Positions 195 to 17,010 of a stretch of 64,000 nucleotides of DNA are shown here, piece by piece. The translations under genes were made by a program, and so were the position numbers. A model generated the notes under the pieces. The model saw only the letters and a program-made list of their open reading frames with translations, was not told the DNA's origin and searched no databases. Within the stretch, counting starts at the first letter, position 1. Each line of letters begins with the position of its first letter. The stretch lies in IMG/VR virus record IMGVR_UViG_3300002835_000007, positions 141,932 through 205,931 of that record; one strand, written 5' to 3'.

Positions 195-223
195 AATGTA
201 CAATAAAAAAACCGAAGATGCAA
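195..223 (-). promoter_or_regulatory. host-sigma-type promoter TTGCAT-N17-TACATT, overlapping the upstream terminator
   Basis: Same 17-nt spacing as the other five host-type promoters listed; lies upstream of 13..177. Confidence 0.45.
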
Positions 224-235
224 ATCCTCGGTTTT
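205..235 (-). terminator. intrinsic terminator after 264..1133
   Basis: Minus strand ACCGAGGAT-TTGC-ATCTTCGGT (one G-U pair) followed by a T run. Confidence 0.75.
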
Positions 236-240
236 AATTT

Positions 241-252
241 ATGTGTTAACTC
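241..252. repeat. left arm of a 12-bp inverted repeat flanking 264..1133
   Basis: ATGTGTTAACTC is the exact reverse complement of GAGTTAACACAT at 1223-1234. Confidence 0.8.
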
Positions 253-263
253 GTTAATTTATT

Positions 264-1133
264 TTATGCTTTTGTGCCGCATTGACCACAAAACTTGTGT
301 CCTTTTCCTAATTTAGCACCACAGTTTGTGCAGTATACTTTTACATTGATATCTTCAACTGTGTTTATTTTTTGTGACACTGGTAACATTTTACATTCAA
401 TAGTGTGAAAAGCCCAGTATTCAAACTTTTTATCCACTGTAACAACCTTTTGGTCAGAAACTGAACCTTGCTCTACTCTACCAGTTTCTATGCTCTTAGA
501 ACGACTCTTTAGCGTTCTAGTTGGATTAGCTTCTTTTGGTGCGTCCATTGATAACATATCATTCATTGAATCAAGTGTTGGTACACTATTACTAACTGAA
601 GAAGTATATAACGCAGTAGACCCAATATGACCAGATGTGTTTGTAATATTAACGCTACCGTTAGGTATAGATGAAGCATACCCACCAATTGTTGTATTGT
701 TTATAGTTCCACCAAAACCTCTAGCAGTATTACTATTTATTGCTAGTGTGTTTAAGTAATTAGGAACTCTTTCTCTGTAGAATTCTACTTTGAAATCACC
801 ATTCTTTTCGATTGCTTTTTTAACTTCTTCAGTATTTGAAACTTCATAAGTATCAAATAAGAATTTTTTAGCAACATCTAAGTATCTGTCTAAGAATACT
901 CTTTGGCCAGGGTTCAATACCAAACCACCTTGTGAAATAGGATTACCATTAAGTATGATTTTAGCCAGAATAACATCCGTTGTTGGATTAAATAATTCGA
1001 TTTGGAACTCTTGTCCCTTTTGTAGATAATACGTTGGCATATCGCCCGTATTGTTGTAGACTTTAAGTCTTGATTTGTTCACAGCAATATTAGCTGTAGG
1101 CACAGATTGTGCCGCAGAATAATTTAAATACAT
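264..1133 (-). CDS. hypothetical protein with C-terminal zinc ribbon
   Basis: 289 aa ending CTNC-x10-CGQC; beta-rich N-terminal domain; low-complexity S/T/N/G linker. Confidence 0.75.
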   Translation of the reverse strand: MYLNYSAAQSVPTANIAVNKSRLKVYNNTGDMPTYYLQKGQEFQIELFNPTTDVILAKIILNGNPISQGGLVLNPGQRVFLDRYLDVAKKFLFDTYEVSNTEEVKKAIEKNGDFKVEFYRERVPNYLNTLAINSNTARGFGGTINNTTIGGYASSIPNGSVNITNTSGHIGSTALYTSSVSNSVPTLDSMNDMLSMDAPKEANPTRTLKSRSKSIETGRVEQGSVSDQKVVTVDKKFEYWAFHTIECKMLPVSQKINTVEDINVKVYCTNCGAKLGKGHKFCGQCGTKA

Positions 1134-1157
1134 TTTAATTAACTTTTAATTTTTGTT

Positions 1158-1234
1158 ATTATTGTACCGATACCTTTGCTGCCTTGACAGCTCTAAACCA
1201 TTTCTGGTCGGGACCAATACGTGAGTTAACACAT
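1158..1234 (-). ncRNA. candidate structured cis-regulatory 5' leader RNA
   Basis: GC-enriched island in AT-rich DNA; hairpins ACCA-GAAA-UGGU and GCUGU-CAAG-GCAGC enclosed by UAUUG/CAAUA; no known family recognised. Confidence 0.45.
1223..1234. repeat. right arm of the 12-bp inverted repeat
   Basis: GAGTTAACACAT, complementary to 241-252. Confidence 0.8.
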
Positions 1235-1235
1235 T

Positions 1236-1244
1236 TATAAATAT
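1236..1244 (-). promoter_or_regulatory. putative late promoter ATATTTATA
   Basis: Motif recurs upstream of about 16 genes in sense orientation. Confidence 0.55.
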
Positions 1245-1259
1245 AGTGAAAAAATGTTT

Positions 1260-1586
1260 TTAGTAAATACCTTTACAAAATATATTTTGTATTTGGTGCC
1301 AATATGTGTCAGCTTCATCTGGAATTGAATCACCAGACATACCTTTTTCTTTAACTTCATTAGCTATTAAATCTTGCTCATGTTTTAAATTATGTAAAGG
1401 TGTATAAATTTTTCGCATAATCTTATACCTAGTTATTCTATCAACGTTTTTTAAGGCTTCTTCAACATTATTAAAGGCTTCTTCAAAAGAATTAATAGTC
1501 ATTTTTTTACAAACATTAGAATAATTTAAATTTTTTTCATCTAAACTAATTTGTTCTCTAATTCTTTTTTTTATAAAACTTTTCAT
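1260..1586 (-). CDS. hypothetical protein, possible internal head protein
   Basis: 108 aa; N-terminus MKSFIKKRIREQISLDE carries I/L-x-E motifs. Confidence 0.65.
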   Translation of the reverse strand: MKSFIKKRIREQISLDEKNLNYSNVCKKMTINSFEEAFNNVEEALKNVDRITRYKIMRKIYTPLHNLKHEQDLIANEVKEKGMSGDSIPDEADTYWHQIQNIFCKGIY

Positions 1587-16670: not shown

Positions 16671-17010
16671 ATTTATCTTCTATTCTAATAACGTCATCTA
16701 GAAAATTTGTAGAACTTTCTAAATACAAACTGTCAACGATTGCCGACATTCTATGAACTACAAATGGTTCAATTGTGTAATACTCACCTTCATTTAAAAT
16801 CATTTCAGTTAAGGTGTCTTTGTCTGGGCCAATTTCAAATTTAATTTGACCTTTTAAAACATAAAAAGATTCATGTTTTTTTTCATGGTACTGTAAGCTG
16901 CAACTATTTCCAGCTGTCATGAATAATTCTTTAACTACGTAATTTTCATTAACTTCAATCCATTTTTCCCATCCCCATGGTTTATCAACTTTTGTAACTT
17001 CTTTTTTCAT
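16657..17010 (-). CDS. cupin (mannose-6-P-isomerase C-terminal-like)
   Basis: KPWG, SLQYHEKKHESFYVLKG, HRM. Confidence 0.85.
   Translation of the reverse strand: MKKEVTKVDKPWGWEKWIEVNENYVVKELFMTAGNSCSLQYHEKKHESFYVLKGQIKFEIGPDKDTLTEMILNEGEYYTIEPFVVHRMSAIVDSLYLESSTNFLDDVIRIEDKYGRV

What the first reader, a model, noticed from the sequence alone, without database searches (positions are those of the whole stretch)
1158..1234. Unrecognised structured RNA leader in front of a zinc-ribbon gene
Seen: the ~100-nt gap between a late motif (1236-1244) and ATG 1133 is much more GC-rich than other intergenic DNA here. On the sense (minus) strand it folds into a junction: closing stem UAUUG/CAAUA (1215-1219 with 1160-1164), CCG/CGG, a GNRA hairpin ACCA-GAAA-UGGU (1197-1208) and GCUGU-CAAG-GCAGC (1178-1191). 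The GNRA loop and the G-U pair exist only in the sense orientation. Nearly all other late genes have unstructured leaders of under 25 nt. I cannot match it to a riboswitch or ribozyme I know. Inference: a cis-regulatory RNA, possibly an autoregulatory operator bound by the encoded Zn-ribbon protein.
Basis: partly seen in the sequence, partly recalled or inferred. Interest (0 to 1): 0.75.

Follow-up and report, generated by a model that had tools for sequence, protein, structure and literature searches.

The report
Conserved end-pairing RNA leader, jumbo phage
The messenger RNA of one conserved zinc-ribbon gene in a family of ~360-kb freshwater phages carries a previously undescribed folded three-way junction in its leader, and its first bases pair with its own 3' untranslated region; both features are kept by compensating mutations, so they are real regulatory RNA structure whose exact job is still unproven.

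Summary

- **Three-way junction (1164-1220).** It sits upstream of every complete upstream region of this gene examined: 61 distinct leaders plus 12 held-out loci, with proteins down to 36-47% identity. 95.7% of cells are paired and 18 of 22 pairs show double changes. Slid controls reach at most 47%. Two P1 wobble pairs are invariant.
The two hairpins are right. The closing-stem register has no covariation support. The GNRA loop is not conserved.
- **No known family.** Rfam 15 gives no match. There is one copy per genome.
- **New: end pairing (H0).** The first about 12 nt of the predicted transcript (1223-1234) pair with the 3' UTR (241-252), just before the intrinsic terminator. This helix covaries in 51 of 61 leaders. 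In distant relatives it is kept with wholly different sequences.
- **Weaker signal.** The same 5' strand has 6-8 bp of complementarity to the gene's own start region.
- **Most likely function.** A post-transcriptional stability and translation module built on 5'-3' fold-back, like hok or hbs mRNA. The junction probably serves as a recognition platform.
- **Untested.** Autoregulation by the zinc-ribbon protein remains possible. The transcription start is inferred from the promoter, not measured.

The parts
1262..1267 (-). -33-like promoter element (TTTACT here; TTGAC in most relatives). It overlaps the stop codon of the upstream 108-aa ORF.
   Evidence: TTTACT, 16-nt spacer, TATATT; cTTGACa conserved in relatives.
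1238..1245 (-). -7 promoter box TATATTTA of the Bacteroidota sigma-A type (TAnnTTTG). The predicted start is the 4th-6th nt downstream, about 1232-1234.
   Evidence: PMC9723704 places the box at -12..-5. The start itself is inferred.
1223..1234 (-). H0 5' strand, AUGUGUUAACUC: the first ~12 nt of the predicted transcript. It pairs with 241-252. It also has 6-7 bp of complementarity to 1139-1145 near the start codon.
1164..1220 (-). Three-way junction. P1 is 1210-1220 with 1164-1174 (11 bp, one C.U mismatch, invariant U.G and G.U). P2 is 1205-1209 with 1196-1200 (loop 1201-1204). J2/3 is UAGA, 1192-1195. P3 is 1187-1191 with 1178-1182 (loop 1183-1186). J3/1 is AAA, 1175-1177.
1134..1163 (-). 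A-rich, Shine-Dalgarno-less linker and translation initiation region. Its conserved blocks are AAUAAUAACA (1154-1163) and AAAAGUUAA (1139-1147).
   Evidence: near-invariant columns; complementarity of 1139-1145 to the H0 5' strand.
264..1133 (-). Gene for the 289-aa protein. It has an Ig-like beta-sandwich (residues 12-125 plus 214-251), a disordered S/T/N-rich insert (133-209) and a C-terminal CxxC-N10-CxxC zinc ribbon.
241..252 (-). H0 3' strand, GAGUUAACACAU, 11 nt after the stop codon. It pairs with 1223-1234.
204..235 (-). Intrinsic terminator (stem-loop 208-235 and U tract) that ends the monocistronic transcript.
   Evidence: A terminator at the same place in 48 of 57 distinct relatives.

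Best explanation
This is a cis-acting, post-transcriptional control architecture of a monocistronic phage mRNA.

Shown:
(i) A three-way-junction RNA is kept by compensatory mutation directly upstream of this gene in every complete upstream region examined. Its junction nucleotides are conserved (UUUAGAG in the main family, reduced to UUGAG in the distant relatives; AAA) and two wobble pairs in P1 are invariant.
(ii) The stretch from the predicted transcription start to the junction is complementary to the 3' UTR just upstream of the terminator. That complementarity is kept while the sequence turns over completely.
(iii) Both features are sense-strand specific.

Inferred:
- In the finished transcript the extreme 5' end is locked into a 10-15 bp helix with the 3' UTR. 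This helix is stacked next to P1.
- The lock closes the mRNA into a panhandle and hides the 5' end from 5'-end-dependent decay.
- In the nascent transcript the same 5' strand can instead pair weakly (6-8 bp) with the gene's own initiation region.
- Completion of the 3' UTR would then free the start site. This would be a hok-like fold-back switch working in the activating direction.
- The junction, with its invariant G.U pairs, is most likely the platform recognised by a protein or by the ribosome.
For: Three-way junction:
- 61 distinct leaders: 95.7% of cells paired, 18 of 22 pairs with double changes, slid controls at most 47%, and 0 of 500 shuffles reach the observed value.
- 43 sequences including distant ones: 96.1% paired, 19 of 21 pairs with double changes, U.G and G.U invariant.
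- The model finds one copy per genome in 6 genomes.
- It finds the motif in 12 of 12 held-out loci.

Helix H0:
- A 9-20 bp duplex is present in 51 of 61 leaders.
- It starts 2-5 nt after the -7 box in 47 of the 51.
- Pair counts are 627 Watson-Crick and 10 G.U (plus 3 non-pairing mismatches) inside the 51 duplexes, against a single C.A, in the weaker duplex of L034.
- Duplex energy is -15.1 kcal/mol for a locus's own 3' UTR and -9.4 for non-cognate ones.
- Pair probability is about 1.0 in the fold of the full 1035-nt mRNA.
- Unrelated sequences keep the pairing in L102, L103 and L104.
- A terminator lies immediately downstream in 48 of 57 loci.
- In two loci with a homing-endonuclease insertion, the H0 strand stays at the transcript's 5' end. 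A second, divergent junction stays in front of the Zn-ribbon ORF.

Complementarity to the start region:
- Energy is -4.90 kcal/mol for a locus's own start region and -3.75 for non-cognate ones.
- The real strand beats 91-99% of shuffled strands in 17 of 22 representatives, spread over about 8 sequence classes.
- The pairing forms in the leader-only minimum-energy folds of L102, L103 and L104.
Against: - No 5'-end or 3'-end mapping exists. The start is inferred from a promoter consensus.
- One metatranscriptome contig of a relative runs 71 nt upstream of the predicted start. That means read-through, DNA carry-over or a different start.
- The pairing with the start region is weak (-4 to -6 kcal/mol).
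- It is not formed in the window's own leader fold.
- It showed no own-versus-other signal when all loci, mostly of one class, were pooled.
- Five relatives with swapped 3' ends keep the leader but have no 3' partner, and three of the held-out loci (L094, L100, L101) also lack a strong one. H0 is therefore dispensable at least transiently.
- A purely structural role does not explain why the junction nucleotides and two G.U pairs are invariant.
Confidence: 0.5

Rival explanations
1. Autogenous (or other protein-mediated) translational operator. The Zn-ribbon protein, or another phage or host protein, binds the three-way junction. It represses or activates translation, perhaps by spreading along the A-rich linker as T4 gp32 does. 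This is compatible with the end-pairing architecture.
For: - Junction nucleotides and two G.U pairs are invariant while the helices covary, which is typical of protein recognition sites.
- The element is strictly linked to this one gene.
- A divergent second junction is retained directly before the ORF after the endonuclease insertion.
- Nearly all of the 150 closest cluster representatives keep the Zn ribbon.
Against: - The protein has no similarity to any known RNA- or DNA-binding protein. It is an Ig-like sandwich with Z of 7 or less.
- The junction lies 30 nt from the start codon and does not overlap it.
- No binding data exist.
Confidence: 0.25
2. Metabolite- or ion-sensing riboswitch whose aptamer is the three-way junction.
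For: The size (57 nt), the conserved junction with variable helices, and the 5' UTR location resemble small junction aptamers.
Against: - No Rfam family matches, even at E up to 10.
- There is no terminator or anti-terminator, and no strong start-site sequestering helix that depends on P1.
- It occurs once per genome, before a gene with no metabolic link.
- The loops are not conserved, so no loop-loop tertiary contact is indicated.
Confidence: 0.07
3. RNA-processing element. Either it is a new self-cleaving ribozyme, or the stacked H0+P1 helix (about 23 bp) is a double-strand-specific RNase cleavage site that trims the transcript ends, as in rRNA and tRNA precursor stalks.
For: - The junction has a hammerhead-like topology, with strand lengths 7, 3-4 and 0-2.
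- H0 abuts P1 with a 0-3 nt linker.
- A tRNA cluster in the same genome is also flanked by a 15-nt terminal inverted pair.
Against: - The hammerhead core residues C3, G5, A6 and G12 are absent. No ribozyme family matches.
- No cleavage data exist.
Confidence: 0.08
4. DNA-level feature: the two arms are inverted repeats acting as recombination or protein-binding sites that flank an invertible or mobile gene cassette.
For: - Inverted repeats of 10-15 bp with a palindromic GTTAAC core flank the gene.
- Covariation of the arms could also arise by gene conversion.
Against: - In all 74 loci that include the conserved upstream 467-aa gene, the cassette has the same orientation.
- The antisense strand has no ORF.
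- Wobble asymmetry is 10 G.U to 1 C.A in sense terms.
- The arms track the predicted start and the terminator.
- GTTAAC is not enriched in the genome, with 80 found against 69 expected.
- The gene diverges in step with its syntenic neighbours.
Confidence: 0.03

Closest known systems
hok mRNA tac/fbi fold-back (hok/Sok type I toxin-antitoxin systems)
   Same: - The extreme 5' end of a monocistronic mRNA pairs with its 3' UTR.
- The pairing is kept by covariation.
- The 5' element has an alternative partner near the translation start, so the 5'-3' helix decides whether the start site is open (PMC9841398).
   Different: - In hok the closed form is the inactive one, and activation needs 3' trimming. 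Here the 3' UTR would act as a decoy that frees the start site.
- There is no toxin, no antisense RNA and no Shine-Dalgarno sequence.
- A conserved three-way junction lies between the elements.
- The alternative pairing is weak and unproven.
Bacillus subtilis hbs mRNA 5'/3'-UTR interaction
   Same: [quoted passage not shown]
   Different: - The organism is different, and so is the RNase set.
- hbs depends on a strong Shine-Dalgarno sequence.
- Here the helix starts at the predicted first nucleotide and is joined to a junction motif.
- Any effect on decay is untested.
Phage T4 gene 32 translational operator (from my own knowledge, not checked here)
   Same: A structured element at the 5' end of the leader is followed by a long unstructured A/U-rich stretch that reaches the start codon, in front of a phage gene for a zinc-containing protein.
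   Different: - The T4 element is a pseudoknot, not a three-way junction.
- gp32 is a known single-strand-binding protein. This protein has no such similarity.
- T4 has no 5'-3' pairing.
Ribosomal protein S15 binding sites: a three-way junction plus a G.U/G-C motif (from my own knowledge)
   Same: A three-way junction combined with invariant G.U wobble pairs in the closing helix serves as the recognition surface.
   Different: There is no sequence or Rfam similarity, and the gene is unrelated to S15. This is only a structural analogy.

Membership tests
Any Rfam 15 family (riboswitches, ribozymes, leaders, sRNAs) | Covariance-model score at or above the family's gathering threshold | tested here: not met
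   There were 0 matches in the whole window. At E up to 10 over 1000-1400 only chance hits of 15-21 bits appeared. Nothing overlapped the leader in 6 divergent relatives.
tRNA / tmRNA | Cloverleaf detected by ARAGORN | tested here: not met
   0 genes in the window.
Hammerhead ribozyme | Three-way junction with the core CUGANGA ... GAAA ... UH | tested here: not met
   The topology and strand lengths are similar. However, J2/3 is UUUAGAG and so lacks C3, G5 and A6. J3/1 is AAA(G), with no conserved G12. No Rfam hit.
Purine-type three-way-junction riboswitch | Conserved kissing loops and a conserved junction pocket | tested here: not met
   The P2 loop varies in length and sequence, and the P3 loop is only loosely YWAG. 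No Rfam hit.
hok-type fold-back mRNA | The 5' end pairs with the 3' end of the same mRNA, with covariation | tested here: met
hok-type fold-back mRNA | Alternative pairing of the 5' element that controls access to the start site | tested here: inconclusive
   There are 6-8 bp of complementarity in about 8 sequence classes. Own energy is -4.90 kcal/mol against -3.75 for non-cognate pairs. The pooled test showed no signal.
hok-type fold-back mRNA | Small toxin ORF and a cis-encoded antisense RNA | tested here: not met
   The gene encodes a 289-aa beta-sandwich/Zn-ribbon protein. No hok or Sok Rfam hit.
hbs-type 5'/3'-UTR stabilising interaction | At least 10 bp of complementarity between the 5' UTR and the 3' UTR | tested here: met
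   12 bp in the window, and 9-20 bp in 51 of 61 relatives.
hbs-type 5'/3'-UTR stabilising interaction | The interaction changes RNase cleavage or mRNA half-life | not testable with these tools
   This needs in-vivo decay measurements.
Autogenous translational operator (T4 gene 32 type) | The gene product binds its own leader | not testable with these tools
   No binding assay was possible. The protein has no similarity to nucleic-acid-binding proteins.
Invertible DNA segment (Gin/Hin type) | Both orientations are present in the population | tested here: not met
   74 of 74 loci that include the upstream 467-aa gene have the same orientation. No strand-switch joints were seen in the laid contigs.

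The most novel reading that the evidence does not exclude
This would be a transcript-completion checkpoint in a DNA phage.
- The first ~12 nt of the mRNA mask the gene's own start site while the RNA is nascent.
- A start-site mimic in the 3' UTR then captures that strand once the terminator-proximal end has been transcribed. Only full-length, end-locked mRNAs would be translated and stabilised.
- The conserved three-way junction, stacked on the end-to-end helix, would be a new RNA class that recruits a protein or the Shine-Dalgarno-independent Bacteroidota ribosome.
Probability: 0.3. Interest if true: 0.85.

Novelty: new variant of a known kind. Interest (0 to 1): 0.7.

Why it matters
- **A new RNA family.** It is strongly supported (no Rfam match, dozens of independent compensatory changes) and comes from uncultured ~360-kb phages that probably infect freshwater Bacteroidota.
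- **A poorly understood host type.** These hosts initiate translation without Shine-Dalgarno pairing, and their post-transcriptional control is poorly known.
- **A rare kind of evidence.** Evolutionarily proven 5'-3' UTR pairing is known for only a few bacterial mRNAs, such as hok and hbs. Here the helix survives complete sequence turnover across a protein family with 1,660 clusters at 50% identity.
- **A tractable model.** This offers a natural system for how mRNA end-to-end closure controls stability and translation.
- **A possible engineering part.** The module could serve as a portable expression-control element for Bacteroidota.
- **A flag on the gene.** The unknown beta-sandwich/Zn-ribbon protein is evidently under unusually tight control.

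Tried and rejected
- **Rfam and ARAGORN.** Rfam at gathering and permissive thresholds, on the window and on six relatives, gave nothing. ARAGORN gave nothing.
It has no covariation support.
- **Local 5' hairpin.** A hairpin GUG/CAC around UUAACU appears in the single-sequence fold. It has no consistent register in relatives and competes with well-supported P1 pairs, so I rejected it by inspection.
- **Hammerhead.** Mapping onto the hammerhead core fails at the catalytic residues.
- **Repeated element.** The leader is unique in the genome and GTTAAC is not enriched.
- **Transcript ends from public RNA.** Only assembled contigs were available. One contig of a relative crosses the predicted start, which is inconclusive.
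- **Protein function.**
  - Pfam finds only the Zn ribbon, and PHROGs adds only a weak match to a family of unknown function over the same Zn-ribbon residues.
  - PDB sequence and fold searches give only generic Ig-like matches.
  - AlphaFold DB, BFVD and the ESM Atlas give uncharacterised viral proteins.
- **SHOCT-domain variants.** I tried to reach them to test whether the RNA depends on the Zn ribbon. The listed hits all keep the Zn ribbon, so this was not achieved.
- **Pooled start-region test.** Pooling all loci gave no signal. The class-representative test gave a modest one.
- **bS21 link.** Only one of five relatives encodes bS21, and the held part of this genome has none.

Full report
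**Context**

The window is the last 64 kb of a 205,931-bp IMG/VR virus record that is 58% complete.
- Complete relatives are 360-369 kb, some with direct terminal repeats. The genome is about 30% G+C.
- Public runs that hold it are freshwater and lake metagenomes.
- Genes here are preceded by TTG, about 19 nt, then TAnnTTT(G/A), followed by 13-33 nt A-rich leaders with no Shine-Dalgarno sequence.
- That is the sigma-A promoter type of Flavobacteria and Bacteroidota, whose -7 box lies at -12..-5 (PMC9723704). I therefore infer a Bacteroidota host.

**The observation**

- The gene 264-1133(-) encodes 289 aa. Its only Pfam hit is a C-terminal zinc ribbon.
- The 107-nt sense leader folds to -20.9 kcal/mol (z = -2.2). 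The antisense strand gives z = -0.5.
- The core 1164-1220 is 49% G+C, against 27-30% for intergenic DNA.
- Rfam 15 has no match at the gathering threshold in the whole window, and nothing meaningful at E up to 10. ARAGORN finds no tRNA.

**Conservation and covariation of the junction**

- The search for related loci returned 80 loci with homologues of 40-100% identity. The 150 nt upstream of each start codon are visibly conserved.
- I made a structure-blind MAFFT alignment of 61 distinct leaders.
  - RNAalifold recovers a three-way junction, and 16 of 20 pairs have double changes.
  - With my 22-pair structure, 95.7% of cells are paired and 18 pairs show changes on both sides.
  - None of 500 shuffles reaches these values. 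Slid registers give 32-47%.
- The helices are:
  - P1: 1210-1220 with 1164-1174.
  - P2: 1205-1209 with 1196-1200.
  - P3: 1187-1191 with 1178-1182.
- The joining strands UAGA (1192-1195) and AAA (1175-1177) are nearly invariant.
- A covariance model behaves as follows.
  - It finds exactly one copy in this genome and one in each of five relatives, four of them complete.
  - It finds one copy in every locus with a complete upstream region.
  - It finds the motif in 12 of 12 loci not used to build it. These include six mis-binned metagenome-assembled-genome (MAG) contigs whose proteins are only 36-47% identical.
- In a model-fitted alignment of 43 diverse sequences, 19 of 21 pairs covary. The fourth (U.G) and seventh (G.U) pairs of P1 never change.
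- These wobble pairs would be A.C mismatches on the other strand, so the functional molecule is the sense RNA.

- Printing the 3' UTRs showed a motif that is the reverse complement of the conserved stretch at the very 5' end of the leader.
  - In the window it is GAGUUAACACAU (241-252), 11 nt after the stop codon. It pairs with AUGUGUUAACUC (1223-1234).
- The two arms change together between relatives. Examples are UACGUUAACUC with GAGUUAACGUA, AUCGUGAUU with AAUCACGAU, and ACGUGAUUAAACUA with UAGUUUAAUCACGU.
- Of 61 distinct leaders, 51 have a 9-20 bp duplex.
  - It begins 2-5 nt after the -7 box in 47 of the 51, which is at the predicted +1.
  - It ends 0-5 nt before P1.
  - The 3' arm lies mostly 8-16 nt after the stop codon.
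- Duplex energy averages -15.1 kcal/mol for cognate pairs and -9.4 for non-cognate pairs.
- In the distant loci L102, L103 and L104 the arms have entirely different sequences and still pair over 10-12 bp at the same positions. The GUUAAC core is therefore not essential.
- A fold of the full 1035-nt transcript gives this helix pair probabilities of 0.75-1.0.
- An intrinsic terminator follows at 204-235. One is found at the same place in 48 of 57 distinct relatives, with unrelated hairpin sequences.
- The unit is therefore promoter, leader, one ORF, 3' arm, terminator.

**RNA or DNA?**

Inverted repeats flanking a gene could instead be recombination sites. The evidence against that reading is:
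- Wobbles inside the 51 duplexes are 10 G.U in sense terms, against a single C.A, in the weaker duplex of L034.
- The arms track the predicted transcript ends.
- All 74 loci that include the conserved upstream 467-aa gene have the same orientation.
- The antisense strand has no ORF.
- GTTAAC is not enriched, with 80 found against 69 expected.
- The gene is syntenic and diverges with its neighbours.

I rate the DNA-level reading at about 3%.

**Natural experiments**

- In L029 and L039 a GIY-YIG homing-endonuclease gene sits right after the first leader copy.
  - The promoter, the H0 5' strand and junction copy 1 now precede the endonuclease ORF.
  - In L029 that ORF is fused to the first ~19 codons of the Zn-ribbon gene.
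  - A second, divergent junction (47-50 bits, with further compensatory changes) but no H0 strand sits directly in front of the Zn-ribbon ORF.
  - The 3' arm after that ORF still matches copy 1.
  - So H0 belongs to the transcript ends, and the junction belongs to the ORF's start region.
- Five relatives (L012, L024, L035, L043, L057) have recombined 3' ends and no 3' arm, yet keep the leader. Three of the held-out loci (L094, L100, L101) also lack a strong 3' partner. H0 can therefore be lost, at least for a time.

**A three-way relationship**

- The H0 5' strand is also partly complementary to the gene's own initiation region, with different sequence solutions in different clades.
  - GUUAACU with AGUUAA(U), at -12..-5 (main family; 1224-1230 with 1139-1145 in the window).
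  - CGUGAUU with AAUUAUG, covering the start codon (L037, L064, L075, L079).
  - CCUUGU with AUAAGG (L102, L104).
- Over 22 class representatives, energy is -4.90 kcal/mol for a locus's own region and -3.75 for non-cognate ones. The real strand beats 91-99% of its own shuffles in 17 cases.
- Leader-only folds of L102, L103 and L104 form this helix around the junction.
- L039 copy 2 has a 14-bp version.
- The energies are small. The window's own leader fold does not form the helix. A pooled test dominated by one class showed nothing. I treat this as suggestive only.

**Mechanism**

- Shown: a gene-specific, sense-strand three-way junction and a transcript-terminal 5'-3' helix, both under purifying selection for pairing.
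- Inferred: the finished mRNA is closed into a panhandle with a fully paired 5' terminus. This is a known route to protection from 5'-end-dependent decay.
  - Compare the 14-bp 5'/3' UTR helix of B. subtilis hbs mRNA (PMC5737220).
- Inferred: the same strand may mask the start site until the 3' UTR decoy is transcribed.
  - This is formally like the tac/fbi fold-back of hok mRNA (PMC9841398), but acting in the activating direction.
- The invariant junction residues and G.U pairs imply a specific partner, which could be a protein, the ribosome or a ligand.

**The protein**

- The AlphaFold2 model has mean pLDDT 73. It shows a split Ig-like beta-sandwich, a disordered S/T/N-rich insert and the Zn ribbon.
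- There is no informative match in the PDB.
- The nearest folds are uncharacterised proteins of phages, giant viruses, nudiviruses and baculoviruses.
- The family is large: 2,536 clusters at 90% identity and 1,660 at 50%.

**Limits**

- All sequences are metagenomic, and no host is cultured.
- The transcription start is inferred.
- The one RNA-library contig that covers the leader comes from a relative and extends 71 nt upstream of the predicted start. This could be read-through or DNA carry-over.

**Verdict**

This is a real, new structured RNA family joined to a covarying 5'-3' UTR helix. Its function is most likely control of mRNA stability and translation by fold-back. The partner that recognises the junction is unknown.

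Noticed in passing
L029:2172-2870 and L039:2047-2862: Two different GIY-YIG homing-endonuclease genes (232 and 271 aa) are inserted at the start of the Zn-ribbon gene. Each is followed by the same divergent second copy of the leader junction. The conserved leader/start region is evidently a homing target, and the endonuclease borrows the gene's promoter and leader.
   Followed up: partly
Outside the window: G000:C1:15575-15589 and 16839-16853: A 15-nt perfect inverted pair flanks a ~1.26-kb tRNA cluster, with the right arm just after a tRNA. Terminal 5'-3' pairing of transcription units may be a recurring theme in this phage, as in rRNA and tRNA precursor stalks.
   Followed up: no
Outside the window: G000:C1:93000-105000: A cluster of unusually G+C-rich intergenic segments, with a repeated 12-13-nt motif (GGAGTCTACTCT) in both orientations. 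These may be further non-coding RNAs or regulatory repeats.
   Followed up: no
Window-wide and G000, e.g. window 1238-1245: The promoters are of the Bacteroidota type (TTG, about 19 nt, TAnnTTTG) and the leaders lack a Shine-Dalgarno sequence. This suggests a Bacteroidota host and host sigma-A-dependent transcription for this ~360-kb phage family. One relative (G002) encodes ribosomal protein bS21.
   Followed up: partly
L012, L024, L035, L043, L057 (3' ends of the Zn-ribbon gene): The last residues of the Zn ribbon and the whole 3' UTR are replaced by unrelated sequence with its own terminator. L024 and L043 share the same replacement although their proteins differ. These loci have lost the 3' arm of the end-pairing helix.
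   Followed up: partly
window 264-1133 (protein): The beta-sandwich fold of this phage protein matches uncharacterised proteins of giant viruses, iridoviruses, nudiviruses and baculoviruses. It also matches the N-terminal domains of eukaryotic multidomain proteins. Foldseek gives probability 1.0 with TM 0.4-0.6. This is a widespread viral domain of unknown function.
   Followed up: no
L099, L100, L103 (genome contigs): Contigs carrying this phage gene and its RNA are filed in MAGs labelled Methanobacterium, Pacearchaeota (a 425-kb contig) and Bacteroidetes (254 kb). These are probably jumbo-phage contigs mis-binned into cellular genomes.
   Followed up: no
window 1223-1232 and 1196-1204: Two mini-ORFs (AUG-UGU-UAA at the predicted 5' end and AUG-GUU-UAG in P2) exist only in this phage's version of the leader. 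They are not conserved in relatives and are probably meaningless.
   Followed up: yes
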